A DNA stretch of 41,685 bases. It comes from Prasinococcaceae sp. CCMP 1430. Lineage: Eukaryota > Plantae > Prasinodermophyta. The translations under genes and the position numbers were made by a program. How positions within the stretch are numbered: position 1 is the stretch's first letter; the number at the start of each line of letters is the position of its first letter. The notes under the pieces were generated by a model. It worked only from the letters and a program-made list of their open reading frames with translations, searched no databases and was not told the DNA's origin. The DNA is taken from NCBI GenBank assembly GCA_013416795.1, contig RQSC01000456.1, positions 12,192-53,876 of the forward strand, in the 5' to 3' direction. Positions 2,016 through 29,238 of this stretch are shown here, in pieces.

Positions 2016-3029
2016 ATGAGCGCGTGGCGGCACGCGCCGCTCGTGGCGCGGCGCGACGGGGGGGGGCGACTCTCACGCAGGCGAGCCGCGCGCGCGCAGG
2101 CGAAGCGCGTGCGCTTCGGCGGCGGCGGCGGCGGCGGAGCAAATGATCGGCTGCGGGAGACCATCAGTGACTCGCGCGCCGAGCGTGGCGGCGCGGCCAG
2201 GCCTGAGGGCGTGCGCGGGGAAGGCGGTGCACGGAGGGATGCCAATGGCGTCAACGGCCGCGTGGAGCGTCCCAATGGCAGCACGGCGGGCGCGTCAAGC
2301 ATGGCCAAGAGGCTTGGCTCAGTGCTCGGCGGCGCGGGCGCGGCTCTGCTGCGCGAGCGGCGCGCGCGGGCGGACGAGGTGGCGTTGGATGTGCCCGAAG
2401 CGGTGGGGGATGGGATGGCGGAGGTCGGCGCCGGGGTGGAGGGCGCGCTGGAGGGCGCCGCGGACGGCTCCGCCGCCGCGAGCGCGGCCGACGCGGCGAT
2501 GGACGACTTCTTCGCCGACGAGCGCGTGCTGCTCGAGTACAACCGCGCGCGGCGCATGCAGGCGCTCAACGGCGCCCCCGCGGACTTCCCCACCTTTTTG
2601 CGCGACGGCTTCGAGGCAACGGTGGTGACGCCGCCCGAGACGGACTACGTGGTCGGCAGCGACGGCCTGCTGACGCTCGACTTCGAGTTGGGCACCGGGC
2701 GCGCGCCCGGCCCCACCGACGAGGTCGTATTCGAGTACAAGGTGTACAACGAGGCGGGCAAGCTCATCGACGGCACGTACAACAAGGAGACGCCCGGACA
2801 GACGCGCCTCGGCCTCGGGGGCCTCATCCCGGGCGTCGAGGAGGGGATGCTCGGCATGCGCGTCGGCGGCAGGCGGCGCATCGTGTGCCCGCCGGAGCTC
2901 GGCCCGCCCGTGGGGCCGCAGACGTTCTTCATGAGCAGGCAGTACGAGGTCTTCGACGTGAAGCTGCTCGAGGTCCACACGTGCACGGAGAAGCAGGTGC
3001 TCTTCACCAAGCGCTCCGTGTGCGAGTGA
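2016..3029 (+). CDS. FKBP20-2: Thylakoid-lumen FKBP-type peptidyl-prolyl isomerase, FKBP20-2-like
   Basis: FKBP domain (LIPGVEEGMLGMRVGGRRRIVCPPELGPPVGPQTFF..QYEVFDVKLL) plus the C-terminal Cys pair (TCTEK...VCE*) characteristic of FKBP20-2. Long Arg/Ala-rich N-terminal targeting region. Confidence 0.88.
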   Translation: MSAWRHAPLVARRDGGGRLSRRRAARAQAKRVRFGGGGGGGANDRLRETISDSRAERGGAARPEGVRGEGGARRDANGVNGRVERPNGSTAGASSMAKRLGSVLGGAGAALLRERRARADEVALDVPEAVGDGMAEVGAGVEGALEGAADGSAAASAADAAMDDFFADERVLLEYNRARRMQALNGAPADFPTFLRDGFEATVVTPPETDYVVGSDGLLTLDFELGTGRAPGPTDEVVFEYKVYNEAGKLIDGTYNKETPGQTRLGLGGLIPGVEEGMLGMRVGGRRRIVCPPELGPPVGPQTFFMSRQYEVFDVKLLEVHTCTEKQVLFTKRSVCE

Positions 3030-4158: not shown

Positions 4159-4629
4159 TACATCGATGACAGCATGATGTCGACCGGCGCGCTGGCCTCG
4201 GCGTGCATCGTGGGCTTTGACGGGCAAATTTACGCGCAGAGCGCCGACTTCCCGGCCATTACCGCGTCACAGGTCCAGACCTTCAAAGCCAACATCGCCA
4301 ACCCGGACGCCCTCGGCGCGACCGGCCTCATGGTCGGCGACAACAAGTTCTACACTGTGGCCTGCGACCCGGGCAGCGTGCTTCGCGGCAGGAAGGGCGC
4401 GAGCGGCATCTGCATCGCCATGGCCAAGACCTGCTTCCTGATCGGCATTTATGGCGAGGGCCAGCAGGCTGGTGATGTCAACAACATTGTGGAGAGCTTG
4501 TGCGACTACCTGAAGGTGCGAGTCCTTGTCTAGACTGTCGAAGTCGAGCGCCAGCCAAAGCGAGCGAGTGCGAGTGTGCTGACCGCTCCTTCTTGGCCTG
4601 CCGTCGCCCTGCAGGACCAAGGGTGTTAA
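4159..4629 (+). CDS. PRF: Profilin; exons 4159-4515 and 4615-4629; short first exon not located
   Basis: YIDDSMMSTGALASACIVGFDGQIYAQS...LRGRKGASGICIAMAKTCFLIGIYGEG...VESLCDYLK|DQGC* is a typical profilin. Intron 4516-4614 runs GTGCGA...GCTGAC...CTGCAG. Upstream acceptor at 4157-4158 with GCTGAC at 4095. Confidence 0.92.
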
Positions 4630-5019: not shown

Positions 5020-6417
5020 TCACAGCTTCGAGTACGCGCCGCCCGTCGACGGTACGGTGCGCGACTTATCGCCGAGCTCACCTCCGTCTGTCGTATTTCG
5101 TCGGAAGCGCTGAATGCCCAGGTAGTGCGTCACCTTGCCGCTGTCGGAGTGGAGCGGAATGAGCTCCAGGTCGTTAACCAGCTCAGTGCCGTCCTTATGG
5201 TAATTCATTATGCGCACGCGGCAGGCGCGGCCCTCGGCGATGGCGGAGCGTATCGCGGAAAGGGCCTCTGTGTCCACGTCGTTGGTTGACTGCAGAAAGC
5301 GGCAGTCGCGGCCAAGGATCTCCTCGACGGAGTATCCCGTCTGCAGCACGAAGTTATCGTTGCAGTACACGATGGGGCCGTCGCCCTTGGGGGTCATGTG
5401 GGACACGCAGAGCGCATGCGGCGTCCAGCTCACCAGGTGCTCGACGAGCGAGCGCGACTGCTCGTCGACGGTGTCCAGTGAGCCGTGGTTGAAAGCGGTG
5501 GAGGGGAGCGTCGGCGACACATCCATACGCGGGCCGGAGCCTTCGTCCGCGACCCCGAAGTTTTCGATCTCAGGCTTGAGTTTGGCGAGCCACGCCCTCA
5601 TGCCAGCGGCCGTGGGATGCAGCGCGTCGCGCATGAGATCCGAGCGCAGCGCCGTGCCGTCCTCGGTGAGGAAGCACTCAGCACAGTCCACGTACTTGAC
5701 TAGGCCGCCGGAGCCTGCCGCGAGCGCGGCCAGCCTCCGATTGACGTGACCGATGACCGCGGTGTGTGCCCCCGGTTGCGCGTACTTGCTGACCTTGTAG
5801 CCAGCGGCCAGCGGTGTCGGTTCCTCGGCGACGCCAGAGTGATACGTCGAGTCCTCCCCAGGCGCGGGCGGCATCTGCGCCCTGGCGCCCACCGGCGGCC
5901 CTCTCGGCAGTATCCCGGGCAACAGCACTTTGGAGCCCGGCAGTCTTGTCAGCACCTCGCCGATGCACGCCCGCAGGCCAAGAAAAATGTCGTGGGCCTC
6001 GTCGTTGTCGCGCCCGACGTTGTTCGTCCCTATTGTGATCACCACGACGCGCGGCGGGTGGCGGAACTCGAGCTCGCCGTTGCGCACGCGGTAGAGCAGG
6101 TGCTGCGTGCGGTCGCCGCTGATGCCAAAGGCGAAGACGTCCCCGCGCGGGAACGCCTCGCGGAACGCCTCGCTGCGCGGGCGCAGCTCGTCGTACGCCT
6201 CGGAGAACTGCGTGCCGCGCATCGCCTCGGTGATCGAGTCGCCCAGGAAGAGCACTCGGCAGCGCGGGCGGCCGGCGATGCCCGCCTCTCGCGCCTCGCG
6301 CACGAAAGTGTCGTGCAGCGCCCGCCACGCGTCGGCGCGCTCCTCGGGGAGCGCCGCGTGCGGGCGGCCGTGGCGCGCCGCGCGCGCCGCGTTGTCGACC
6401 ATGCCGAGCGCCACCAT
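5020..6417 (-). CDS. SGNH/GDSL esterase (PAF-acetylhydrolase Ib-like) fused to a C-terminal LOV (flavin-binding PAS) domain
   Basis: Single stop-free ORF (465 aa from ATG 6417). SGNH blocks: LFLGDSIT (Ser 6237-6235), FGISGDRTQHLLYRVRNGEL, ITIGTNN, DALHP (Asp 5628-5626, His 5619-5617). LOV (~5421-5104): IVYCNDNFVLQTGYSVEEILGRDCRFLQ (Cys 5304-5302), NYHKDG, LVNDL, YLGIQ. Confidence 0.93.
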   Translation of the reverse strand: MVALGMVDNAARAARHGRPHAALPEERADAWRALHDTFVREAREAGIAGRPRCRVLFLGDSITEAMRGTQFSEAYDELRPRSEAFREAFPRGDVFAFGISGDRTQHLLYRVRNGELEFRHPPRVVVITIGTNNVGRDNDEAHDIFLGLRACIGEVLTRLPGSKVLLPGILPRGPPVGARAQMPPAPGEDSTYHSGVAEEPTPLAAGYKVSKYAQPGAHTAVIGHVNRRLAALAAGSGGLVKYVDCAECFLTEDGTALRSDLMRDALHPTAAGMRAWLAKLKPEIENFGVADEGSGPRMDVSPTLPSTAFNHGSLDTVDEQSRSLVEHLVSWTPHALCVSHMTPKGDGPIVYCNDNFVLQTGYSVEEILGRDCRFLQSTNDVDTEALSAIRSAIAEGRACRVRIMNYHKDGTELVNDLELIPLHSDSGKVTHYLGIQRFRRNTTDGGELGDKSRTVPSTGGAYSKL

Positions 6418-6884
6418 CGCGCGTCGGGGGCCGGCCCGCCCCAATCCCGACCTCGCGCCTCCTCCCCTCCGTCAACACGCGCCCAACCTCGGCGCGCCGC
6501 CGCGGTCCGCGCGGGGTGTGGCGCCCTGTCCCCCCTCCCCCCCCACACACACCCGGGCGCCGCAGGCGCAGCTGGCAGGCGAGGAGTCATCGCCCGCGCC
6601 ACGTCAGAAACGCGGAAGAGAGAATTTCAAAATTCCTTCCGTAAACTTTTAAGGCTGAGAGCGTTGAAAAACGACTGGAACCTCCAATTCCGATTGCGTA
6701 CCGCACGCGCGTCAAAGCGCACCCGATTCTCGCGCGCGCGCGCCGCGTTCCGTGGTTCCCGCGGGCCGTCTCGCAGCAGCGGTCGTCTCTAGCTACGTAC
6801 CAACTCTGTCCGGAAAAAAACTAACTACGTCAAAATGCACGGTAAAAGTTGGCCGTTTTTGGCCGTAGACCCTTTTCTAGCTTT

Positions 6885-7560: not shown

Positions 7561-8287
7561 GCCGCAGTCGGTTATTATTCTGTCGCGGGCGCGGGCGCGT
7601 GTGCGGCACACACCGCGCGCGAGCGGCGGCGGGCAACGCGCGGGCAGGGCGTTCGCTTGTCAGTCCCTCGCATCGACCCTCGCCCTCCCCCACGCTCACA
7701 CCACCGCCGCTGCCGGCCCCATGCGCGCGCGGGCGCACGCACATTCGAAGGGTGGGCAGCTCCGCCCCGCACGCCGAGCGCGAGCGCAGCGGCTGCTGCA
7801 ATCGCCGCAGTCCGCGCGGGCGCCATTTGGTGGCCCAGGGCGGCGTCAGGACGGGTAGGTCTGGCGCGTGTCCCCCCGGCGCTCCGGTGGGTGCCCCGCC
7901 CCCCGGGCCGCCGCTCGTGCGACCGTGCGCTCGCGGCTTCCCTCTTCCGCCCCTCCGCGGCGCGGCGGGGTGCGCTGACCACCGTTCCCCGAGCGGCGCC
8001 CGCAGAAGATGCCCCGGCGGCATGCATTTCATCAGGGTTTACCGCAATGATTGGCATTGTCGAGCGAGCGAGGCACCACAGATCAACGATGGACGATGGA
8101 CCATCAGATCGCACCATCAGATGGTCGATCACCATCTACGTCAAAGGAGATGTAACCCTAACCTTCCGAGCGTGCGCGTTCGGATAGAATCCTGTACTGC
8201 CGGAGCGCCGCGACGCCGCTGCCACTGGGCGGCGCGGCGGCGGTGGCGCGGTGCGGCGGCCTGGCGGCCTGCTACCGCCATGGCGCG

Positions 8288-8408
8288 NNNNNNNNNNNNN
8301 NNNNNNNNNNNNNNNNNNNNNNNNNNNNNNNNNNNNNNNNNNNNNNNNNNNNNNNNNNNNNNNNNNNNNNNNNNNNNNNNNNNNNNNNNNNNNNNNNNNN
8401 NNNNNNNN
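8288..8408. other. Assembly gap (N-run)
   Basis: Run of N; hides the 5' part of the NSUN2-like gene. Confidence 1.
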
Positions 8409-8409
8409 C

Positions 8410-9747
8410 TTCCAGGCGGCGGCGGGCCTGGACCGCGCGGCGCTGTCCAAGGGTGGCGTCGGCCGCGGCGACGCCGCGGCGGAGCGGCTGGCGCGGGAGC
8501 TTCCCGCCCGCGCGCGCGCGGCGCAGCTCTGCCGCCAGGAGGCCGTGTCGGCGCTGCCAGTCGCCGCGCTGCGCGTCGCGCCTGGCTCGCGTTGCCTCGA
8601 CATGTGCGCGTCGCCGGGATCGAAGACAATGCAGCTGCTCGAGGCAGTAGGCGCCACGGGGTGCGTGTTCGCCAACGATGCCGACCCGCGCCGTGCGAGG
8701 ACACTGCTCGCGGCGCTGGAGCGGCACGGCAGACTTGGCGTGGGCGGCGAGGCGCCCGCCGACGCCGACTCGCGCCGCTCGCTTGTGGTAACGTGCCACC
8801 GCGGGGAGGCGCTCCCCGCGCCGCGCCGCGGCCGCCGCTTCGACGCGGTGCTCGCTGACGTGCCGTGCAGTGGCGACGGCACTTGCCGCAAGGATGCGAG
8901 CGTGCTGCCACGCTTCTCGCCCGCCGCCGCCAACGCGCTGCACGCCACACAGCTCGCCATCGCGTGGCGGGGGCTGCAGCTACTGGAGGTGGGGGGGTTG
9001 ATGGCTTACTCGACGTGTTCCCTCAACCCAATCGAGGACGAGGCGGTGGTTGCCGCACTGCTGCGGCGCGGGGGCGGCAATGTGGCGCTGGAGGAATGGC
9101 CCGCTGAGGTGCTCCCGCGATTCAGGCGCAGGGGGGGATTGACGACCTGGGGCGTCGCCGACGTCGTCCAGGGCGGGGGGGAAGCAGGCACCGGGGCGGA
9201 GCGCGACGGGGAAGAGGCATGCGGCGAAAGCGACGGCAATGACTGCGAAGACGAGCCTCGGCTGCGCTGGCACGCTCGCGGCGCGGCCGCCGCCAGGCGA
9301 GCGGGCTTTAAAGCCGCCGTCGAGTCAATGTGGCCGCCGACCGAGGACGAGGTTGCCGCGATGGGCCTCAGTCGCTGCTCGCGCGTGCTTCCCGGGGACA
9401 ACGACACCGGCGGGTTCTTCGTCGCACTGCTGCGCAAGACCGGCGAGCTGGCTGGCGGCGAGGAGGAGCGCGCCTCGACGCAGGAGGACCGCCACAGCGC
9501 CGCTGCCGCCAAGCGAGCGGCGCGCGGCCCCTCGGGCACGCGGGAGCTGGGTGCACTGCGCGCCACCGAGGTGCTGCTCCCGACCGGGGAGGTCGGGGCA
9601 AGCGGCGAGGCGCCGCGCGCTGAGGCCGACACTGTGGTGCTCGCACGGGCGGACGGCAGCCTCTTCGCTGCGAGCAGCGCACTCGCCGACTTCGGCGTGG
9701 GCGGCGAGGGGGGGCTGTGCATCCTCGCCGCGGGCGTGCCAATTTAA
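8410..9747 (+). CDS. NSUN2: RNA m5C methyltransferase, NSUN2/Trm4 family (5' part in gap)
   Basis: RQEAVSALP, CLDMCASPGSKTMQL (SAM motif I), FDAVLADVPCSGDGTCRK (motif IV Cys), AYSTCSLNPIEDEAVV (motif VI Cys), RVLPGDNDTGGFFVALLRK. Confidence 0.9.
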   Translation, partial: FQAAAGLDRAALSKGGVGRGDAAAERLARELPARARAAQLCRQEAVSALPVAALRVAPGSRCLDMCASPGSKTMQLLEAVGATGCVFANDADPRRARTLLAALERHGRLGVGGEAPADADSRRSLVVTCHRGEALPAPRRGRRFDAVLADVPCSGDGTCRKDASVLPRFSPAAANALHATQLAIAWRGLQLLEVGGLMAYSTCSLNPIEDEAVVAALLRRGGGNVALEEWPAEVLPRFRRRGGLTTWGVADVVQGGGEAGTGAERDGEEACGESDGNDCEDEPRLRWHARGAAAARRAGFKAAVESMWPPTEDEVAAMGLSRCSRVLPGDNDTGGFFVALLRKTGELAGGEEERASTQEDRHSAAAAKRAARGPSGTRELGALRATEVLLPTGEVGASGEAPRAEADTVVLARADGSLFAASSALADFGVGGEGGLCILAAGVPI

Positions 9748-9831: not shown

Positions 9832-12800
9832 TTAGAAGAGCGTCGCATCGGGAGGGCCAGCAATCGCGTCCTCGAGCCGCCGCTGGCGTTCGGTCATGGC
9901 CTGCTGCTGCCGTTCGAGACGCTTGAGTGAAGCCTCGATCTCGGAGAGCGCACTCGCAACGTTCGCCGCGCCCCGCCCGCTGGTGAGCGCCTCCTCTTCC
10001 AGCGTTCGCGTGATGCGTGTATCCACCTGGTCCTCGTCGTCGTCGTTCCAGGCTGTCATCTCTGCGCTGAGTGGCGCGCTGATGGTGCGGGCTTGACCAG
10101 CGCGGGCCCTCGACGGCCGCCCAAGGGACTCCCTCCAGACGACTTCTCTTTGCACGGGCATTGCGTCGGTGCTGAGAATCTTCAGCAGGGGCCTTCTCTG
10201 GGTTCTCCGTTGCTGCACGCTCCCTCGCCAGTGTGTGACCAGCCGCTGCAAGCTCTTATGCCGGCGCTCCTCGTCGACCGTCAATGGATCCTCCCCTTGG
10301 CAGGCCGCGCCAAACTCTTGCCCGGTTTCTTCGCGGATGCGCACTCGTGCTGCATGCCCGCGCCAGTATCGCTGCACAGTGATTGCGCTGCCATCGACTG
10401 ACGCCGGAGACCTGCCGCTATAAAATGCGTACACCTTGCTCAGGTCGGGCGCGCCGTTGGTGTACGCGAGAGCGGCTCCGAGCGCGCGCCACTCCGTGAC
10501 AGCCGAGCGTATGGTGTGCGCTCGGCGACCGCTCGCGTTGCGCGCTGCCGCGAAGTCGCGCGCGATCTCGAAGCTGCTCACAATGATCGCGATGACGAGG
10601 TTCAGGGCGACGATGGAGACCACGATCATGTACAAAAAGTACCAGACATAAAATGGCCACTTGCTCGCAGACGGGAAGTACTCGTTTGGAAAGGGATCGA
10701 AGAGCAAGTTGAACACCGACAGCAGCGTCTCGAAGAAAGTCGTGTAGCCTGGCAGCAACAAGTACCCATTGTAAATTTGGGCAAAGAAACAAAAGCCGAA
10801 GAAGACGAGGCTACCAGATGCCATGAAGAAAAGCAGGGTGCCGGCCGCCACCGCGAGCGTCGTGAGCATCAACGACATGCGCGCGTCGATGTGCGCATAG
10901 CGCAAGACCCTGAGGAAGAGCAGAAGAGCAGTGAATGCGAGCGCGATGAGCCAGTTGTATTCGGCACTACTCGCAGCCTCGATTGCGTCGTCGTAGAGCT
11001 CGTACGGCAGGCGGAGCCTTTCGTCGTACCATTCCTGCACAAAGGATTCCCACACGGCGATGCGCTCTTCAGGCGTTGTTAGGAGCGCCTGTTGCGCCTG
11101 CAGTTGCAGCTGCTCTCCCAGCGGAGGGCTCATTTGGAAGTTGAGCTGGAGGGCGTCGCTGTAGGCTTTCCAGTCTATGTCGTACCACCCTTCTGGCAGC
11201 GGCGGCGCCTCCCCACCGCAGACCTCGTCGACGTCCTCGCACCCCCCTCCGATGGTATTGGCGAGCTGTAGGTCGCACGTGCAGGCGCCTTCGTTGTTGG
11301 GGAAGCCACACCAAGTCACGTTGGGTGGGCCCCGCGTGACTCCCTCGCCCGCGTGCACGCAGCTTCGGCTCAAATTCGAGGGGGGTGGCTCGAATGGCGA
11401 CGCCTCTCCAGTCTCAATCGGCGGCGATTGCCCAGATGACCCCCCTCCGCCAACGCTCTGTTTCGACCGCGTCCATGGGCGGCCTAACCAGAAGTACGGC
11501 TCCTCACCAAAGATGGCTGAGTTCAGGTAGAAATCTCGTAGGTAGCCCGGATCGTTCTTCGGCACCCAATGACGCGTCGTGAGGTTTCGCAGCTCATCCG
11601 CTGAGCACACGGTGTGGCAGTTGCCCCACTTGCTAGCGCAGCACATCGGCGAATACAGAGTTTCAAGGCTCTGGCCTGTCGCGAAAACGGTCTCGCCGCA
11701 GCATGTGAGCGTGACGTCGTCCCAGCTCTGCGAACCCATGGGCTCCAGGGCGTCAAGACCGATTTGCGCGCCGGTGACTGCGTTGTGCTTGTCGACGTAC
11801 ACGACGTACAGCGCTATGCACGTAATCATGACGGCGAACGTGATTGTGTCGAAGACCATCCACTTGCGACTGGCAGCCGAGGCCAGCGTCCGCCAGAACC
11901 TGTACATGACGTGCGGCGTTCTGTACCGAAGCGAGCGCTCTATCGCCCACAGGCGCCCCACGATCGGGAAGCAGAGATAAAAGCACGTGAAGATGACGAA
12001 TATCACCTGGAAGACCGCGAGGGCGACGCCCTGTGCTCCGGGATAGAGGTCCATGGGGAGAAAGACATACGAGATCCCAGTGCTTGAGTGGCGTGCCTCG
12101 GTGCTGTCATATTGCGCAAGCACCCAGAGCGAGTCTGTTGCGAACCCGTTCTCTCGCTCGCCATTGACCGACAGGCCGTTGTTGCTCCCCTTGTGCGCGC
12201 CCGGCTCTGCCGCGGTGACATTCCACTGGCCGGATCCACTGTTTGGCGGCGTCCTGCGCAGCAGCATGCGCCAACCCATGTCGATCTCAGCACAACACTC
12301 GCCATTGGTGGTGCCGCTGGCTCGTCTGTCATCACTAGCGCTCGAGGTGAACACGCCGGTCGCTTGTATGCAATTGGAATCGTTTGTGAGCGCCTGGAGA
12401 CTGGTCGCGAGAACATCTGGGTCGAGGGGCGAGCACATGTCGTTCAAGTTCTGGACAAAAACACGCGCAGTGCGTGAAGTCAGTGGTGGACAGACATTCG
12501 CCGCAAAATGCGTGAGTGTGGCAGGCTCAGTTCCGGAGGCGGCGCGCACGTACATGAAAGCTCGTCGACCTGCGCCTGTGGACCTCACATGCCATCTGGA
12601 TGCCATTAGCGCAAGCGAGCTCGACATGGGCGCTCACTCTGTCGGACGCTCCGAAGGAGTAGCCGTAGGAGGGCGACGTGTGCCAGTTTATTTCCGACGC
12701 AGTGATGTTGTCGAATGCGTCGAAGTTGTACAGCGGCCAGAGTCCCCGCAGGTCTCCACCCACGAAATCCGTTGAAAAGTTGGCCAGACTCTCCCGTGCC

Positions 12801-15283: not shown

Positions 15284-18200
15284 TCACTTCTTCCTGGCGC
15301 GCGTGCTCTGCTTCGTGGCGCTGGCGACGACCTTGACCTCGACCATCAGCCCCTTGCGACGGCGTACGCCATCGACGAGCCGTCGCGCCACATTGGTGGT
15401 GGGGACGTCACCGCCCTCGCCGTGCTCCTCGCGCTCATCCTCGGTGAGCGGCACGAAGAGCGGATCCGTCTCGACCGCCTCCCCGGAGATGGGCTCCCAG
15501 TGTGAGAACATGAGCATAGCGGATGCCGCGCCGCTCGTGCGCGTGCGCAGCTCATCTGCGAAGCCAAATGACTCGGCGACAGGCATGTGCGCGAGGATGA
15601 GGAAGCTGTCCGCACCTTCCACCATCTGCGGACGAGATTATTCGTCAGCGGTGTCAGCGCTTCAGCTTGAGGGCACAGCGCGTCGGGCGAGCGCGTCCGG
15701 CCATGGGCGCGCCAACGAGCCACCGCGCGGCCAGCGTCACGGGCGCGGCGCAATGCGTACCTCCTCGCGCAACACGCGCCCGCGGCGGCGACTGATGGAT
15801 GCATACGCACCGCCGAGCGCGTCCGTGCGAGCGCCGCACTCGCAGATGTACATCGCCTCAACCAGTCGCGGCCCGCTCGCCAGCATAGCCGCGCGCAGCG
15901 CCTCCTTGGTCGCGCTCAGCGCCTGGCCCGACAGCGCCGACAGATTCGCCCCACCCGCACCGCCTGCGGCACTGCCGACCGAGGCCTTCCCGTCGCCCCC
16001 CGTGCCCTCGGCCGCGTCTCTGCTGGCGCTTGTATCGAGGCACGCCTCCACCTCGAACGCCACCGCCCACATGGGCTCGTTGCAAAGCGGGCCTGCCTGC
16101 GCTGCAGCCTGGAAGCCCGCGAGCACTCCCGCCTCGAGAGTCGCCAGCTGCGTTCCGAGTTGGTCGACGGCAGCGACTAGACCGGGGTCCCCCTTGGCCT
16201 CGGCCTGAGCCTCACCATCACAATCGCCGTCGACGAGGCGCAGGCGCCGGGAAGCGGCAGGGTGGCCCAGAGGAATCCAACGTTCGCTGAGAGCGTCCGC
16301 ATCTCCGCCTGCGATCGCGTCCGCCGCGGTGGCCCGCAGCGCTGCATCGCGCGCACATCTGCCACCGTCGCGTCCGGCAGCGAGCAGCATGCACGCGCCC
16401 GTGTTGTGCGGCCCCAGCGACCACATCCGCGCGAGCAGCTCGGCAGGTTGCAGACCCATCGTGTCAGGCGCCTCGGCGCCCCACGCGCCGTCGGCCGCCT
16501 GCTCGCTCACCTGACCTGCGGCAGCCAGCAGGCGGTCGTGCACAGCCCGCGCCGCCTCGGCGACAACGGGTGCGTCATGCTCGCGATCGTCGCCAGCACT
16601 GGCGGGACCGCTGCCTGGGGCCTGCTCTGTCACGGTCGCTGCGATCGCACCCACGTCGGCATCGACGCCGGCGCCGCCTTCGGCGCCGCCGAGGGCGGCC
16701 GCGAGCTCGTCCCTGGACTCGTCGATGGCTTTGGCGAGGGTGAGTGGGATGCGCGCGCAGCGCACGCGAAGCCGCGCCACGGCAGCGTGCGCGCCACCGC
16801 CGAGCGACACCTCGGCGGCCCATTTCATGCCCGCACCCACGCGCGTGCCGTCGGCAGGAACCGCGGCACCGCGCCAGTATGCTGGGAGCGCACTGGGCTG
16901 CGGCGGCGGACGCTGCTCTTCGGCGCTCGCGAGGCTCTCGCGAAACGCAATCAGAGGGGCGCTCACTCGCACGGGCACGCGAGCGAAGCGCTCCTGCAGG
17001 TCCTTGACGCATCGCTCGAGGTGCACCTCGCCCGCCGCACCGACCACGAGCTCGCCTGTGGGCTCTTGCACGACGTCCACGAAGGGGTCGGCTTGGTTGA
17101 GGAGCCGCAGGCCCGCCTCGAGCTGCGGCAGGTCCGTGGCGCAGCTTGGCTCCACCGCCACGCGCACGATGGGCGCGGCGGGGAAGGACATCGGTGCCAG
17201 CGCGCGCGAGAGCGGCGTCGACGCGAGCGTGGCGCTTTTGAGGATACGCGACGACAACCCAGCGATGGCCACGAGGTTGCCCGCGGGCACGCTCTCCACG
17301 GGCTCTAGCGCGCGACCCATCGGTAGAAAGAGCTCGACCGAGCCTGGCGGCAGCACGCGCGCCGCCGCCGCTTCAACACAGGCCGCATCGCTGGGATCAT
17401 GGGCGGCGTTGAGCACGTAGAGTGACGTGGCGGCCGTGAGCACGCCCGAGAACACGCGCGCGACCGCCACGAAGATCTGCGGTGGCGCATCACCGCTGTC
17501 AATCTCGGCCGCAGCTGCTTCGGTTCGCGCCGCCGCCGCCGCCGCTGACTGCGGCGGGAGGTCGGCGAGCTCGACCGACACCATCTTGGCGACGTACGCA
17601 ACCACAGGCGCTGACTCGTCCGACGAGCACTGCGCGATTGCGCGCGAGCACGCCGCGGTCTCCTCGGCCTCATCGGGGCGCGATGGCAGCTCGTTGCGCT
17701 TGCGCGCTGCGCCGCTCGCGCCCAGAAGGTGCGGAGCCCGCGTGGCGGCGGCATCAGCCGGCGAGGGCAGAGCGTGCGCCACGTTCGAGAGCACCGCCTT
17801 CGCCAGCGGGAGCCACGCTCGCATGACGCTGCGCACGGCGCTGGCGGTCTCCGCCTTGGACAGCTCCCGCGCAGGCACCGACAGCTTCATCTTCGAGGCC
17901 AGCGCGGTGAGCAGCGGCCGGCCGGCCTGCGCGTCATCCTCTGCGGCGGTGCTGTACACCCGCCATATGGGCTCCAGGCAGAGCTGCGCGAACATGGGCT
18001 TGAGCTTGTTGCCCGCGAGCTTGCGCCCCACGATGCGGCGCGTCTTCGGGTGGTAGTACCTGTCCCCCCACAGCCCCTTGAGCAGCGCGCGGCGCGAGGC
18101 GCCCATCTTCGCGGCGTACATGTCGGCGAACTGGTCGATGGTGAACGCCCAGCCGTCGTAGGCGGAGGCGAAGGCGACGTTGCCGCGCTCGGGGCTGAAC

Positions 18201-18907
18201 ATGTCCTCGTCGTCGTCGTCGTCGAGCAGCGCCTCCAGCTCGGCCGAGGCGTCCTCGATGCTGATGCTCACGTCCTCCGCGTCGGCCTCGTCGCCCTCGC
18301 GCGCCTCGCGCGCGGCCTCCGCGTCCATTGCGAGCTCATCGGCGCGAGAGATGTACTCCTCCGAGCGGAACGTGCCAATGAGCAGGTTGACGTCCGCCAC
18401 GACGCGCCTGAGACGCTGGTAGGCCTCCTCCGGTGTGAGGCACAGCTCGCTGATGAGGCGGTCCACCTTGTTGAGGACGAGCGTCATGCCGAGCCCCTCG
18501 TCCCATGCCTGGCGCAGCGTGGCGCGCGTCTGGATGCACACGCCCTCCAGCGCGTCCACGACCACGATGGCGCCGTCGGAGAGGCGTACGGCGGCCGACA
18601 CCTCCGAGCAGAAGTCGACGTGCCCTGGCGAGTCGATGAGGTTGACGAGGTGGCGCCCGTCGCCGCCCTCGTGGAGCAGTGAGATGGAGCTCGCCTTCAT
18701 CGTGATGCACCGCTGCTGCTCGTCCTCGCGCGTGTCGAGGTAGCGCAGCGAGCCAGCCAGCCGCGGGTGTATGATGCCGTTCGACGCGATGAGCCCATCG
18801 GTGAGCGTCGTCTTGCCGTGGTCGACGTGCGCCACCACGCACACGTTGCGCACCCGCGCCGTGCACGACTGCAGCGACGTCAGCGTCGACGTCGCCACCT
18901 CCGGCAT
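15284..18907 (-). CDS. EFL1: Elongation factor-like GTPase 1 (EFL1/Ria1), 60S maturation; intron 15760..15626
   Basis: RNVCVVAHVDHGKTTL, RYLDTREDEQQRCITMKASSI, NLIDSPGHVDF, NKVD, LNQADP, GAAGEVHLERC, GPLCNEP, C-terminal RRRKGL...ATKQSTRARKK*. Intron GTACGC...GCTGAC...CGCAG. Confidence 0.95.
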
Positions 18908-18986
18908 GGCGCCCGCGCGGCGCGGCGCGCGCGCGCCCGCNGCGCGCCAGCGTGCGCGTGGCACGGGGGGGCATGGGCGGTGCTAG

Positions 18987-22521: not shown

Positions 22522-23105
22522 NNNNNNNNNNNNNNNNNNNNNNNNNNNNNNNNNNNNNNNNNNNNNNNNNNNNNNNNNNNNNNNNNNNNNNNNNNNNNNN
22601 NNNNNNNNNNNNNNNNNNNNNNNNNNNNNNNNNNNNNNNNNNNNNNNNNNNNNNNNNNNNNNNNNNNNNNNNNNNNNNNNNNNNNNNNNNNNNNNNNNNN
22701 NNNNNNNNNNNNNNNNNNNNNNNNNNNNNNNNNNNNNNNNNNNNNNNNNNNNNNNNNNNNNNNNNNNNNNNNNNNNNNNNNNNNNNNNNNNNNNNNNNNN
22801 NNNNNNNNNNNNNNNNNNNNNNNNNNNNNNNNNNNNNNNNNNNNNNNNNNNNNNNNNNNNNNNNNNNNNNNNNNNNNNNNNNNNNNNNNNNNNNNNNNNN
22901 NNNNNNNNNNNNNNNNNNNNNNNNNNNNNNNNNNNNNNNNNNNNNNNNNNNNNNNNNNNNNNNNNNNNNNNNNNNNNNNNNNNNNNNNNNNNNNNNNNNN
23001 NNNNNNNNNNNNNNNNNNNNNNNNNNNNNNNNNNNNNNNNNNNNNNNNNNNNNNNNNNNNNNNNNNNNNNNNNNNNNNNNNNNNNNNNNNNNNNNNNNNN
23101 NNNNN
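22522..23105. other. Assembly gap (N-run)
   Basis: Run of N. Confidence 1.
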
Positions 23106-24541: not shown

Positions 24542-24578
<37 letters not shown>

Positions 24579-25130
24579 AGCCGACGCCGACGCCGACGCC
24601 GGCGCCGGCGCCGGCGGGAAGGAGAGCGAGGCGGCCGCACACGCACGCGCACGGACACACAAACACAAACACAAACGAAAACACAGACACGCACACACAC
24701 ACAAGAAGACGAACGAGCACGACACACACGCACAAGCACTCCAAAACACGATCGAGCACAGCACACACACACTCGCACGCACAAGCGCAAACGCGAACAC
24801 GCACGCCACACACGCACGCGCGCACACACACGCCGAGCGCGCTGCCGTCCTCGGCGTGGGGGGAACGAAGGTGGGCGGCACCAGGGCGGGCGACGACGAT
24901 GACAACGGCGGCATGGTGTGCGGCTGGGGGCCACTGGTGCGCGTCCGCGCGTCCGCGCGTCCACGCGTGCGCGCGTGCGCTCTCACACATGCACACACAC
25001 AAACACACACGCGCACACATGCACGTCTGACGCGCGCGCACGCACACACAAACACACAAACACACAAACACACACACCTACACACACACACACCTACACA
25101 CACACGCACACACACACACACACACACACA

Positions 25131-25161
<31 letters not shown>

Positions 25162-26799: not shown

Positions 26800-29238
26800 A
26801 TGTACTATGTATTTAACCACGGGCGACTATTTCACATCAAATTGAAAGCGGTCGTCCGGCCGCTTCCCGAAGCCCTCGCCGCCGGGCGGGACGGCGGCGG
26901 CGGCGCGGTGGCCACACCGCGCTGTGTGTGTGTGTGGGGGGGGGAGGTTGCGGCGGCGGCGGCGGCGTGCGAGGCGTGCAGAGCGCTCGCCGCCGACCGC
27001 GGCCGAGGCCGAGGCAGCGGACGCGGCGGCGGCACGCAGCAGCCACCGCAGGGGCCCAATCGGGAGGCGCGCAAGGCGCTCGCGCGCCACCTCTCCCGGC
27101 CGCTGCCGCGCGCGGGGACGAAGGGCAGGCCCTTGCACGCGGCGCGGCTGCACGCGGTGTACCAACTCGAGCAGGTCGAGCGCGCCGGCGCGAGCGTCGC
27201 GGGCATGGACGTCTATGGCGATGTGGCGGGCGGGGCTGATGGCGTCGGCGCGGACGAAGGCGGTGCGAGCGCAGGCGTCCAGAATGCTGCCGTCGACGCC
27301 GGGAGCAGCACCATGCTCCGCAGCTGGCAGCATGGGATGGCGCGCCTGTCGGCGTCCGAGAGGCGCACCGTGACGCGCCTCGTCTCTGGAGTCACGCGGC
27401 GACGGCGCGCTCTCGACTACGCCGCGGCCGCGCTGCTGACGGGGCGGGAGCTGCGCAATCTCGCCCCGCCGCTGCGGCAGTGCCTGCAGCTCGGGCTGCA
27501 CGAGCTCGTCGAGGCGCACCAGGCGGGCGACGGCGCCGCCTCCGCACGCGCGACGGTGTACGAGCTCGTCGAGGTGGCCTCCGCCAGCGCCGCGGGTGCG
27601 CGCTCGGGCGCGCTGGTGAACGCCGTGCTGCGCGCTGCCGAGCGGCAGCTCGCCGCTGAGGGCGCACTGCCAGCGCCAGCACCGCCATCGACGGCGGCGG
27701 CTGCGGCGCTCGCCGCGCCGAGTGCACCGCACAGTCCTGCTGCCGTCGCGGACGGCGACGCGGCGCCCGACGCCGCGTTGGTGGAGTGGCTCGGAGTGAC
27801 CCACTCCCACCCGGACTGGCTCGTGGCGCGCCACGTGGCGCAGCTTGGCGCGGCGGACGCCGCGGCGCTGCTTGCGGCAAACAACGAGGCGCCACAGTTT
27901 GGCGTGCGTTCAACGCTCGCGGGGCAGGCGCGCACGGGAGACGGGGGTGTCGCAGGGGCCGACGTGGCGGCCATGCTGACGTCCGACCTCGAGGCGGCGC
28001 TGGCCGAGGCGGCCGAGCGCGAAGACTCGGCAGCGCTCGGGGACGCGGCGGCGACGAGTGGGGGCGAGACCAAGGCGGAAGAGGGCGAGGACGCAAATGC
28101 TGCGAATCAGCTCGAGGAGGGCGCCTCCGCGACGGGCACGGAAGCAGACGCAGCGATGCGACGGGCGGCCCAACGCGGCGGTGACGTCTCCGGGGGTACA
28201 GACGCCACGCCGGCGGTAAATAGCTCCGCGCTCACGCCGGGCTTTGCGCGCGTGTCGACGGGCCTGCAGGCGATCTCGCGTGCAGGCTTGCTAGCGAGCG
28301 GGCAGTGGGCGGTGCAGGATGAGGCCGCTGGGCTGGTGGTCCACGCCGCACTGGCTCCGCGCCCTGGCGACCGGGTGCTGGACGCCTGCGCAGCGCCGGG
28401 CGGCAAGGCGCTGCTCGCTGCAGCACTCATGCAGGGTGAAGGCCTCGTGGTAGCTGCTGATAAGAGCGCGCACAAGGTGGAGGCGATGCAGCAAGCTGCG
28501 AAGCTGCAGGGCGCTTCGAGCTGCGTCACGTGCGTGGCTGCCGCCGCTGAAGAGCTGCAAGGCGCGCTACAGGACGAGGGCCTGCCCATAGCATTCGACA
28601 AGGTGCGCTCACGCCATCCCATTGCGCGCGGGAGCGAGCGAGCGTTTGTATCCTCGAGTCTGCGCGCACACGAAAAGGGCCGTCGAGCAATGGCGGGCGG
28701 GCGCTGCCTGAGTCTGACACGAGCGCCCAATGTGCGCGCCTTCGTATCGCAGGTGCTCGTGGATGCCCCGTGCTCGGGCATGGGTGTCGCCCGCAAGCGC
28801 CCTGACCTGCGCTGGACGCGCAAGGAGAGCGACCTCGAAGGATTGCTGGGCGTGCAGCGCACCATATTGGACGCCGCGGCAGCGCGCGTGGCACCTGGTG
28901 GCGTGCTGGTGTACTCGACGTGCTCGGTGGACGCCGAAGAGAACGCCGCGCAGGCGAAGGCATTCCTCGACAGGCACGCCGGGGATTTCGAGGTCGAAAA
29001 GGTACGCGCGTGGGCCCGCCCGCGCGCTTTGGAGAGCAGGCGCGTGTGCGTCCTCGCTGCTGACACGCGCCGCGCTTTTGCTCGCGTGTGAATGCGATGG
29101 GCGCGCGCCGGCGCTGCTCAGGTGACTGGCGCACCGCCTGATGCGGTGACGCCTGAGGGCTACCTGGCGCTGTTCCCGCACAGGCACGGCACCGACGGCG
29201 CATTTGCAGCGAGATTCAGGCGGCGCGTTTCCCCTTGA
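26800..29238 (+). CDS. rsmB: 16S rRNA m5C967 methyltransferase RsmB/Sun (NusB + MTase), probably plastid; introns 28603-28752 and 29002-29121; start uncertain
   Basis: NusB-like helices (LVSGVTRRRRALDY, LQLGLHELV, GALVNAVLR), SHPDWLV, QDEAAGLV, VLDACAAPGGK, FDK|VLVDAPCSGMG..RKRPDLRW, VYSTCS, FPHRHGTDGAFAARF. Confidence 0.92.
26836..26848 (+). promoter_or_regulatory. RTCAAATYG candidate promoter motif in the C10/RsmB divergent region
   Basis: ATCAAATTGAAAG in an AT-rich island. Confidence 0.5.

What the first reader, a model, noticed from the sequence alone, without database searches (positions are those of the whole stretch)
5020..6417. Candidate blue-light-switchable esterase: PAF-AH-Ib-like SGNH hydrolase fused to an intact LOV domain
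Seen: one stop-free, N-free ORF with a complete SGNH catalytic set (GDS Ser, block II Gly, GTNN Asn, DALH Asp/His), a Ser/Pro-rich linker, a helix-like segment (DEQSRSLVEHLV), and a LOV core with GRDCRFLQ. Established: LOV photochemistry needs this Cys plus the flavin-contacting Asn (NYHKDG), Asn (LVN) and Gln (GIQ), and all are present; only the Asn before the Cys is changed to Asp. The effector-first, LOV-last order resembles aureochromes rather than phototropins, and PAF-AH Ib catalytic subunits work as dimers. Inference: light-driven LOV dimerisation or A'alpha release could switch an acetyl/short-chain esterase on or off, giving a photoreceptor that acts directly on a lipid or metabolite, and a possible optogenetic tool. 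Caveat: I recall bioinformatic LOV surveys listing lipases as rare effectors, so prior listing must be checked. I know of no functional characterisation.
Basis: partly seen in the sequence, partly recalled or inferred. Interest (0 to 1): 0.92.

Follow-up and report, generated by a model that had tools for sequence, protein, structure and literature searches.

The report
Peroxisome-tagged esterase fused to LOV sensor
A marine green alga encodes one protein that joins a small ester-cleaving enzyme to an intact-looking blue-light sensor and ends in a peroxisome address tag, so light may directly control an enzyme inside peroxisomes; nobody appears to have tested this.

Summary
A single stop-free CDS on the MINUS strand (5020-6417, 465 aa) encodes a PAF-AH-Ib-type SGNH esterase with a complete catalytic set. 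It is followed by a disordered linker, a conserved helix and a LOV domain with the photoactive Cys and the aligned flavin-contact residues. Only the Asn before the Cys is Asp.

The fusion is real. It recurs on independent Tara Oceans metagenome contigs, in a Prasinoderma singulare UniProt entry, in MMETSP transcripts and in Dolichomastix. The window is most likely Prasinoderma coloniale.

Three points are new:
- The protein ends in -SKL. A PTS1 tripeptide is kept across the whole SGNH family outside the RAAL/RAAM-ending group, including truly LOV-less relatives (SKL, AKL, PKL, ARM, PRL, SRL). The enzyme is therefore very probably peroxisomal.
- The helix segment before the LOV core is the most constrained part (92% identity, dN/dS 0.07).
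- Relatives with a degenerate PAS domain have lost every flavin-contact residue, which gives an internal control.

The architecture was already deposited as a "putative LOV domain-containing protein" (Dolichomastix). I found no functional study. Light switching of the esterase is plausible but untested. I rate it a new variant of a known kind, interest about 0.64.

The parts
5020..6417 (-). Complete single-exon CDS, 465 aa plus stop (stop codon 5020-5022).
   Evidence: It is 99% identical to the protein on Tara metagenome contig L001.
6286..6366 (-). N-terminal extension (res 18-44; AF2 helix 30-44) that aligns with the N-terminal segment of PAF-AH Ib alpha subunits. Only about 17 residues precede it, so there is no room for an N-terminal transit peptide.
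   Evidence: HMMER alignment to 1fxw_F/1vyh residues 11-40. AF2 helix 30-44.
5548..6255 (-). SGNH/GDSL hydrolase domain (res 55-290). Catalytic codons: Ser61 at 6235-6237, Gly101, Asn132 at 6022-6024, Asp264 at 5626-5628, His267 at 5617-5619. It has two family-specific inserts relative to PAF-AH Ib, about res 64-88 and 175-217.
   Evidence: Pfam PF13472 at 2e-21. Foldseek hit to PAF-AH Ib alpha, TM 0.89, rmsd 1.9 A. The catalytic columns are invariant in the family.
5491..5547 (-). Ser/Pro-rich interdomain linker (res 291-309), predicted disordered and variable in length and sequence across the family.
   Evidence: pLDDT below 50 over residues 293-310. 32% identity to P. singulare. DxxH-to-NGSL spacing ranges 36-68.
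5416..5490 (-). NGSL motif plus A'alpha-type helix (res 310-334), directly before the LOV core. It has constant length in all family members and is the most constrained segment of the protein.
   Evidence: AF2 helix 319-331. NGSL-to-WSP spacing is 20 in 12 of 12 sequences. 92% identity and dN/dS 0.07 against P. singulare.
5098..5415 (-). LOV core (res 335-440). Photoactive Cys372 at 5302-5304, inside GRDCRFLQ. Flavin contacts: Arg373, Gln376, Arg390, Asn405 (5203-5205), Asn415 (5173-5175), Gln436 (5110-5112).
   Evidence: Pfam PAS_9. NCBIfam YtvA and LOV-HK matches. Residue-by-residue alignment to Chlamydomonas phototropin LOV1, 8qi9. Foldseek TM 0.68-0.89 to the single-domain LOV structures listed. 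Column conservation.
5032..5097 (-). C-terminal tail (res 441-462), Gly/Pro/Ser-rich and predicted disordered. No J-alpha helix is predicted.
   Evidence: pLDDT 46-57, with a helix call only on the last four residues. 21% identity to P. singulare.
5023..5031 (-). C-terminal tripeptide Ser-Lys-Leu, the canonical peroxisomal targeting signal type 1 (PTS1).
   Evidence: A PTS1-type tripeptide is kept in orthologues and in LOV-less relatives. The same tripeptides are listed as PTS1 of validated plant peroxisomal proteins in PMC3355810.
6517..6524 (-). GCGCCACA motif about 100 nt upstream of the ATG, on the gene's strand. It may be a promoter or start-site element; this is weak.
   Evidence: 10 copies in the window against 5.6 expected, with 5 of 100 shuffles reaching 10. 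An earlier scan note (s1-377847) proposes the motif precedes gene starts in this genome.

Best explanation
This is a nuclear gene of a Prasinoderma-type marine green alga. It encodes a one-chain enzyme-photoreceptor that is addressed to peroxisomes. The parts, in order, are:
- a PAF-AH-Ib-type SGNH acyl-esterase (Ser61/Asp264/His267, oxyanion Gly101/Asn132)
- a floppy linker
- a strongly conserved NGSL/A'alpha helix
- a LOV core (Cys372)
- a disordered tail ending in the PTS1 tripeptide SKL

Proposed working, with the basis of each step:
1. The protein folds and binds FMN in the cytosol and is imported folded via PEX5/PTS1. This is inferred from the conserved PTS1 and from the known import of folded, cofactor-bound proteins.
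2. Blue light forms the Cys372-flavin adduct. This is inferred from the intact LOV signature.
3. The change passes through the LOV beta-sheet to the A'alpha helix, which is the most constrained segment. This alters either LOV-LOV pairing, as in aureochromes, or docking of the LOV module on the esterase. Inferred.
4. That raises or lowers hydrolysis of a short acyl ester or thioester in the peroxisome matrix. Both the direction and the substrate are unknown.

The sequence evidence shows that the ancestral unit is a peroxisomal SGNH esterase. In some lineages the LOV module sits between the enzyme and its address tag.
For: Domains and residues:
- Domain calls and catalytic and flavin residues.
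- AF2 model with pLDDT 81 (pTM 0.69); folds match PAF-AH Ib alpha and solved LOV domains.

The fusion is real and maintained:
- Tara contig L001 is 99% identical at nucleotide level, shows 9 synonymous against 4 non-synonymous codon differences, and has the same profilin neighbour.
- The P. singulare orthologue is on three independent metagenome contigs and in a UniProt entry.
- MMETSP transcripts and the Dolichomastix database entry also span both domains.

Purifying selection against P. singulare:
- dN/dS 0.14 and 0.27 for the two SGNH segments
- 0.07 for NGSL/A'alpha
- 0.48 for the LOV core

Flavin-contact columns:
- They are kept in the 11-12 LOV members that reach each column, apart from the variable second Arg (Arg390). 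All of them apart from the Cys itself are replaced in the dead-PAS relative P0024, which is the sequence in the alignment; its longer cluster-mate P0015 shows the same degenerate motif.

PTS1:
- LOV members: -SKL (window), -AKL (P. singulare, MMETSP), -ARM (Dolichomastix).
- Dead-PAS relatives: -PRL.
- LOV-less relatives: -SKL, -AKL, -PKL, -SRL.
- Bacterial and other outgroup SGNH proteins have none.
- P0022 is truly LOV-less, because the next gene starts 72 bp downstream.
- These tripeptides are PTS1 of validated plant peroxisomal proteins (PMC3355810).
- The protein has no N-terminal presequence.
Against: - Nothing here is experimental.
- The LOV core is the less constrained domain (dN/dS 0.48, 65% identity).
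- Asp before the Cys is rare: 2 of 157 LOV motifs among the library hits, against 151 with Asn. Its effect on flavin binding is unknown.
- The second phosphate-binding Arg (Arg390) is not kept across the family; it is H, S or K in others.
- The interdomain linker is disordered and variable, so no rigid allosteric path is evident.
- The tool returns no inter-domain error map.
- The residue aligned to PAF-AH Ib Arg22 is Ala here. I recall Arg22 being linked to dimerisation, so a PAF-AH-like dimer cannot be assumed.
- Members of the RAAL/RAAM-ending group (probably Mamiellales) have no canonical PTS1.
- The SGNH domain carries two conserved inserts absent from PAF-AH Ib, so the substrate need not be PAF-like.
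Confidence: 0.55

Rival explanations
1. The esterase is constitutively active. The LOV module does not gate catalysis. Instead it controls oligomeric state or light-dependent binding to another protein or to a membrane, as RGS-LOV proteins bind membranes and ZTL binds partners.
For: The linker is disordered and variable in length. LOV-less relatives evidently work without any sensor. One lineage in the RAAL group deleted the LOV module precisely and kept the rest (P0023).
Against: The NGSL/A'alpha segment is the most conserved part of the protein and has fixed spacing. That points to a specific intramolecular or dimer interface rather than a loose tether. No partner is known.
Confidence: 0.2
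2. The LOV domain of the Prasinoderma protein is photochemically impaired or drifting. It may act as a redox or ligand PAS sensor, or as a plain structural domain in the oxidising peroxisome. It could be on the same path as the dead-PAS relatives.
For: The Asn-to-Asp change next to the Cys is rare (2 of 157). The Gly after FLQ is Ser, and the following loop is one residue longer. LOV-core dN/dS is 0.48. Dead-PAS members (P0015, P0024) group with Prasinoderma in the SGNH tree, support 92/92.
Against: The Asp is shared by two species that are 70% identical overall. In the window protein Cys, Arg373, Gln376, Arg390, Asn405, Asn415 and Gln436 are all intact; P. singulare keeps all of them except Arg390, which is His there. 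In the dead-PAS relative all of them apart from the Cys itself are replaced. Decay would therefore be visible if constraint had been lifted.
Confidence: 0.12
3. Light controls where the enzyme is, not how fast it works. The LOV domain hides the C-terminal PTS1 in the dark and exposes it in light, or the reverse. This would be a natural counterpart of the engineered LOV2-PTS1 import switch.
For: The PTS1 sits at the end of the segment that follows the LOV core, where J-alpha lies in phototropin LOV2. The engineered LOV2-PTS1 tool works in cells (Spiltoir 2016, as described in PMC8993538). The RAAL group (probably Mamiellales) has a fixed 21-residue, highly conserved tail.
Against: AF2 predicts the tail as disordered in the window protein. 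In the relative P0007 it predicts only short helices, the last of them at low confidence. The tail is 21% identical between the two Prasinoderma species, which argues against a docking helix.
Confidence: 0.07
4. The fusion is an assembly or gene-model artefact that joins two separate genes.
For: Gene callers split or truncate several relatives (P0013, P0016, P0017, P0021). The P0016 split was confirmed on its contig, where a separately called PAS_9 gene follows directly; the others are judged truncated from their sequences.
Against: The window has one uninterrupted ORF with no N. The same ORF occurs on an independent Tara contig and on P. singulare contigs. Transcript-derived full-length proteins exist in other species. 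The splits in relatives look like eukaryotic genes with introns being handled by prokaryotic gene callers; the intron was checked directly only in P. singulare.
Confidence: 0.01

Closest known systems
PAF acetylhydrolase Ib catalytic subunits alpha1/alpha2 (mammalian brain; PDB 1wab, 1fxw, 3dt6, 1vyh)
   Same: It has the SGNH fold, with a Ser/Asp/His triad and a Gly/Asn oxyanion hole at aligned positions. It also has the N-terminal extension typical of this subfamily. These are the best sequence matches to the esterase domain and the best structure matches overall (1e-17; TM 0.85-0.89; 25-26% identity).
   Different: It has two conserved inserts, one after the catalytic Ser and one before the KYxQPG motif. 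The residue aligned with Arg22 is not kept. It carries a LOV domain and a PTS1. Nothing here shows dimer formation, LIS1 binding or activity on PAF.
Aureochromes (bZIP-LOV photoreceptors of stramenopile algae)
   Same: The effector lies N-terminal and the LOV C-terminal. An A'alpha helix lies before the LOV core. LOV structures of aureochrome 1a are among the top structural matches.
   Different: The effector is an enzyme, not a DNA-binding domain. No confident J-alpha helix is predicted. The linker is disordered. The protein is addressed to peroxisomes.
Catalogued but uncharacterised 'putative LOV domain-containing protein' of Dolichomastix tenuilepis (AML79330.1 / A0A126X4H5)
   Same: It has the same SGNH-LOV-PTS1 architecture. 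Identity is 54-55% over 87% of the query. Its C-terminus is -ARM.
   Different: It comes from a different green-algal phylum, has the canonical Asn before the Cys, and has a shorter tail. From memory, this accession series comes from the 2016 LOV survey by Glantz et al. I could not open that paper.
Engineered LOV2-PTS1 optogenetic import switch (Spiltoir et al. 2016)
   Same: A LOV domain is followed at the extreme C-terminus by a PTS1.
   Different: The engineered tool embeds the signal in the J-alpha helix so that it is caged in the dark. Here the tail is predicted disordered and is poorly conserved.
Arabidopsis peroxisomal GDSL-motif hydrolase GLH (At2g38180, PTS1 ARL), from peroxisome proteomics
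   Same: It is a GDSL/SGNH-type hydrolase with a PTS1 that was found in plant peroxisomes (PMC3355810).
   Different: No land-plant protein appeared among the best 120 listed homologues of the LOV-less family member (1,011 hits in all). Orthology is therefore not supported here. GLH has no LOV domain.

Membership tests
SGNH/GDSL hydrolases, PAF-AH Ib-like subfamily | Blocks I, II, III and V with catalytic Ser, oxyanion Gly and Asn, and DxxH Asp/His | tested here: met
   Ser61, Gly101, Asn132, Asp264 and His267 are present. They are invariant or nearly so across 13 family members and align to PAF-AH Ib.
SGNH/GDSL hydrolases, PAF-AH Ib-like subfamily | Three-layer alpha/beta/alpha SGNH fold closest to PAF-AH Ib alpha | tested here: met
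   AF2 domain pLDDT is mostly above 90. The top ten Foldseek hits are all PAF-AH Ib alpha, TM 0.85-0.89.
SGNH/GDSL hydrolases, PAF-AH Ib-like subfamily | Obligate catalytic dimer, LIS1 binding and acetyl-specific hydrolysis of PAF | not testable with these tools
   The residue aligned with Arg22 is Ala. The tools offer no multimer prediction and no assay.
LOV photosensory domains | PAS fold | tested here: met
   PAS_9 at 1.2e-15. Foldseek TM 0.68-0.89 to the single-domain LOV structures listed.
LOV photosensory domains | GXNCRFLQ motif with the adduct-forming Cys | tested here: met
   The motif is GRDCRFLQ and Cys372 aligns to the Cys of Chlamydomonas LOV1. The Asn is Asp, which is seen in 2 of 157 library LOV motifs.
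LOV photosensory domains | Flavin-contacting Arg, Gln, Arg, Asn, Asn and Gln at the canonical positions | tested here: met
   Arg373, Gln376, Arg390, Asn405, Asn415 and Gln436 are present. Assigning these positions to flavin contacts rests on published LOV structures, recalled from memory.
LOV photosensory domains | FMN binding and a reversible blue-light photocycle | not testable with these tools
   This needs recombinant protein and spectroscopy.
PTS1-targeted peroxisomal matrix proteins | [SAP][KR][LM]-type tripeptide at the extreme C-terminus | tested here: met
   The protein ends in -SKL immediately before the stop codon.
PTS1-targeted peroxisomal matrix proteins | The signal is conserved in orthologues despite an otherwise unconserved tail | tested here: met
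   SKL, AKL, ARM, PRL, PKL and SRL occur in every complete C-terminus outside the RAAL/RAAM-ending group, including LOV-less members. Outgroup SGNH proteins have none. The RAAL/RAAM endings are non-canonical.
PTS1-targeted peroxisomal matrix proteins | PEX5-dependent import into peroxisomes | not testable with these tools
   This needs localisation experiments.
Aureochromes | bZIP DNA-binding effector N-terminal to the LOV domain | tested here: not met
   The effector is an SGNH hydrolase. Only the domain order is shared.

The most novel reading that the evidence does not exclude
This would be the first natural photoreceptor that works inside the peroxisomal matrix. Blue light would directly switch an acyl-ester or thioester hydrolase there, tying peroxisomal lipid or acyl-CoA turnover to the day-night cycle without any signalling cascade. 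A bolder version is that the LOV domain also gates exposure of its own PTS1, which would make import itself light-dependent.
Probability: 0.3. Interest if true: 0.85.

Novelty: new variant of a known kind. Interest (0 to 1): 0.64.

Why it matters
LOV photoreceptors are known to drive kinases, transcription factors, second-messenger enzymes and membrane binding. An esterase effector has not been characterised, and I know of no photoreceptor assigned to peroxisomes. If it works as proposed, three things follow:
- It would show light acting directly on a metabolic enzyme in an organelle of abundant marine picoalgae, in both Prasinodermophyta and Mamiellophyceae.
- It would give a small, single-chain, natural template for light-controlled hydrolases.
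- The family supplies natural controls for dissecting the coupling: LOV-less forms, dead-PAS forms and a form with the LOV module precisely deleted.

Tried and rejected
1. I could not read the 2016 LOV survey (Glantz et al.) to confirm that it lists this effector class. It is not held under its DOI or PMC id. The supplements of Coesel et al. 2021 are not held either.

2. Literature searches found no study of this architecture. I tried LOV with lipase, SGNH, GDSL, esterase and acetylhydrolase, a 2025 review of algal photoreceptors, a Mamiellales photoreceptor survey and the P. coloniale genome paper.

3. I looked for other SGNH-LOV architectures among the 150 best of 1.84 billion representatives. 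Of the ten multi-stretch hits I scanned, all were tandem SGNH proteins, probably bacterial, and none was a LOV fusion.

4. I tested whether the plant peroxisomal GDSL hydrolase GLH is an orthologue. No land-plant sequence was among the best 120 listed homologues of the LOV-less member P0022.

5. I tried to decide between gain and loss of LOV with an SGNH tree. The family is monophyletic, but its backbone is unresolved and LOV and LOV-less clades interleave.

6. I looked for a J-alpha helix. None is predicted in the window protein. In the relative P0007 only short helices are predicted, the last of them at low confidence.

7. A second SGNH gene near the orthologue on contig L012 (RAAL group, probably Mamiellales) is unrelated.

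8. The apparent low-GC island at 22-23 kb is an assembly gap of 584 N.
Full report
**What is there.** The finding's coordinates hold one uninterrupted ORF on the minus strand. It runs 5020..6444 from a TTG. The first ATG, at 6417, gives a 465-aa protein, and the stop is at 5020-5022. The plus-strand reading of the same interval is full of stops.

Pfam finds Lipase_GDSL_2 (2e-21) followed by PAS_9 (1.2e-15). NCBIfam hits on the PAS part are the LOV-type families, namely YtvA family and blue-light histidine kinase. Against PDB sequences, the C-terminal part matches LOV domains at 1e-23 to 1e-16. The N-terminal part matches the catalytic alpha subunits of PAF acetylhydrolase Ib at about 1e-17.

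- Ser61 (GDS), Gly101 (ISGD), Asn132 (GTNN), Asp264 and His267 (DALH)
- Cys372 in GRDCRFLQ
- Arg373, Gln376, Arg390, Asn405, Asn415 and Gln436

They align residue for residue with Chlamydomonas phototropin LOV1.

An AlphaFold2 model built on a 46-row alignment has mean pLDDT 81 and pTM 0.69. It shows these elements:
- a confident SGNH domain
- a disordered linker (293-310)
- a helix at 319-331
- a confident LOV core (335-440)
- a disordered tail with no J-alpha helix

Foldseek puts PAF-AH Ib alpha first (TM 0.85-0.89, best rmsd 1.9 A), then solved LOV domains (TM 0.68-0.89 for the single-domain entries). The only addition is that the gene is on the minus strand.

**Whose gene it is, and whether the fusion is real.** The window has about 65-75% GC and eukaryotic neighbours: profilin, a polycystin-type channel, an EF-G-like GTPase and RecQ. 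The closest named relative is a Prasinoderma singulare UniProt entry, a member of the cluster whose representative is 70% identical to the query. P. coloniale has 69.8% GC (PMC7455551). The window is therefore most likely P. coloniale or a very close strain.

A Tara Oceans metagenome contig (L001) carries the same gene with the same profilin neighbour. It is 99.1% identical in nucleotides, with 9 synonymous against 4 non-synonymous codon differences.

The P. singulare-type orthologue lies on three independent metagenome contigs. It has an intron straight after GDSITE that the window lacks, and the SGNH-LOV junction again lies inside one exon.

Full-length proteins from MMETSP transcripts, and the Dolichomastix tenuilepis database entry, carry both domains. 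Several 'LOV-less' hits are gene-calling artefacts. P0016, for example, is followed directly by a separately called PAS_9 gene.

The artefact rival is therefore excluded.

The protein ends in -SKL, the prototype PTS1. The tail before it is unconserved, at 21% identity between the two Prasinoderma species. Even so, the last three residues are PTS1-type in every complete family member outside one clade:
- LOV members: AKL (P. singulare, MMETSP) and ARM (Dolichomastix)
- dead-PAS relatives: PRL
- LOV-less relatives: SKL, AKL, PKL and SRL

P0022 is truly LOV-less, because a convergent gene starts 72 bp after its stop. Bacterial and other outgroup SGNH proteins have no such ending.

All these tripeptides are listed as PTS1 of validated Arabidopsis or rice peroxisomal proteins in PMC3355810. 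By my rough estimate such a tripeptide arises by chance in about 0.3% of proteins, so its recurrence on unalignable tails is not chance.

Homology to PAF-AH Ib starts at residue 18, which leaves no room for an N-terminal presequence.

One clade, probably Mamiellales, ends in a strongly conserved ...AEYQxRAAL or RAAM. That ending is not a canonical PTS1. One lineage in that clade (P0023) has deleted the LOV module precisely and kept those last six residues, which shows that the C-terminal peptide matters independently of LOV.

I conclude that the basic unit is a peroxisomal SGNH esterase. The LOV module sits between the enzyme and its tag.

**Is the LOV domain likely to work?**

In favour:
- Cys, Arg373, Gln376, Asn405, Asn415 and Gln436 are kept in every LOV member of the alignment that reaches each column (11 or 12 of 12).
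- In the dead-PAS relative P0024 all of them apart from the Cys itself are replaced; its longer cluster-mate P0015 shows the same degenerate motif. Decay is therefore visible when constraint is lifted, and it has not happened here.

Against:
- Asp before the Cys is rare, at 2 of 157 motifs among library LOV hits against 151 with Asn.
- The LOV core has the higher dN/dS (0.48, against 0.14 and 0.27 for the SGNH parts) between the two Prasinoderma species.
- Arg390 is not conserved family-wide.

From memory of LOV crystal structures, the Asn before the Cys hydrogen-bonds the ribityl chain, and Asp could still accept such a bond. This is not tested.

**How the signal might reach the enzyme.**
- The distance from DxxH to the NGSL motif varies from 36 to 68 residues, and that stretch is predicted disordered. 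A rigid helical spine is therefore unlikely.
- The NGSL motif plus helix (310-334) has fixed spacing to the LOV core in 12 of 12 sequences.
- That segment is also the most constrained in the protein, with 92% identity and dN/dS 0.07.

This is the position of the A'alpha helix. From memory, in aureochromes and other LOV proteins this helix covers the beta-sheet in the dark and is released in light, which allows LOV dimerisation.

I therefore favour light-driven release or re-docking of this helix. That would change either LOV-LOV pairing or LOV-esterase contact, and hence catalysis.

The substrate is unknown. Two conserved inserts near the active site are absent from PAF-AH Ib. A short acyl ester or thioester relevant to peroxisomal lipid breakdown is a reasonable guess, but it is only a guess.

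**Distribution and history.** In a search of 1.84 billion representatives, the only proteins found with both domains belong to this one family. Of the multi-stretch hits I checked, all were tandem SGNH proteins, probably bacterial. The nearest relatives outside the family are bacterial SGNH proteins at about 25-36% identity and a Cymbomonas protein.

The family is monophyletic on an SGNH tree. Its backbone is unresolved, with LOV, LOV-less and dead-PAS clades interleaved, so gain and loss cannot be ordered. Named members come from Prasinoderma (Prasinodermophyta) and Dolichomastix (Mamiellophyceae). The other members are unnamed metagenome or MMETSP sequences.

**Prior knowledge.** The Dolichomastix orthologue is in GenBank/UniProt as 'putative LOV domain-containing protein' (AML79330.1). 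I recall that this naming comes from the Glantz et al. 2016 survey, but I could not open that paper. The architecture has therefore been catalogued.

I found no functional work in the full-text searches. Nor was there any in a 2025 review of algal photoreceptors, which has no mention of lipase, esterase, hydrolase or peroxisome. A Mamiellales photoreceptor survey, the P. coloniale genome paper and Coesel et al. 2021 also have none.

An engineered LOV2-PTS1 import switch exists. The natural tail here shows no sign of a caging helix, so I give light-gated import a low probability.

**Verdict.** This is a real, conserved, uncharacterised gene for a LOV-coupled SGNH esterase that is very probably peroxisomal. 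Its functional reading is plausible but untested, and its novelty claim must be reduced to 'catalogued, never studied'. The peroxisomal address, the highly constrained pre-LOV helix and the natural LOV-less and dead-PAS controls are new here, and they make the system directly testable.

Noticed in passing
window 22522-23105 and 8288-8408: There are assembly gaps of 584 N and 121 N. The first one explains the apparent low-GC island and the odd long ORFs at 21-23.5 kb. Single N bases also occur at 331, 2013, 18941, 21992 and 31199.
   Followed up: yes
window 4217-4533 (+): A profilin gene converges on the esterase-LOV gene, with the two stops about 490 bp apart. The same pairing is kept on Tara contig L001.
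   Followed up: partly
L003:2544-3000: The P. singulare-type orthologue has an intron of about 270 nt directly after the GDSITE block. The window gene has none there.
   Followed up: partly
proteins P0015 and P0024 (metagenome relatives): These relatives keep the esterase, the NGSL-type helix segment and a PAS fold, and they end in -PRL. They have lost the flavin-contact residues: GKACPLLT replaces GRNCRFLQ, and Asn, Asn and Gln are replaced. They group with Prasinoderma in the SGNH tree.
   Followed up: partly
L011:426-1373 (protein P0023): One lineage in the RAAL-ending clade (probably Mamiellales) has a precise deletion of the whole LOV module. The linker motif ...ESWY joins directly to the conserved C-terminal QHRAAL.
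   Followed up: partly
window 6517-6524 (-) and nine other sites: A GCGCCACA motif lies about 100 nt upstream of the ATG on the gene's strand. The window has 10 copies against 5.6 expected, which is not significant on its own. This matches an earlier scan note about gene starts in this genome.
   Followed up: partly
window 2016-3029, 8251-9747, 9832-12627, 15737-18964, 26800-29091, 33391-35850: Other genes by Pfam: an FKBP, two RsmB/F-type (NOL1/NOP2/Sun-like) methyltransferases, a polycystin-type cation channel, an EF-G/EF-Tu-type GTPase, and the C-terminal part of a RecQ helicase (RQC and HRDC domains).
   Followed up: no
window 24544-24613 and 24984-25161: There are two simple repeats: a hexamer GCCGAC repeated 11.7 times and a (CA)n microsatellite of about 88 units.
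   Followed up: no
L012:10110-10838: On the contig carrying an orthologue from the RAAL-ending group (probably Mamiellales), a second SGNH gene lies 3 kb away. It has GSS in place of GDS. It is not a member of this family (BLASTP E 0.002).
   Followed up: yes
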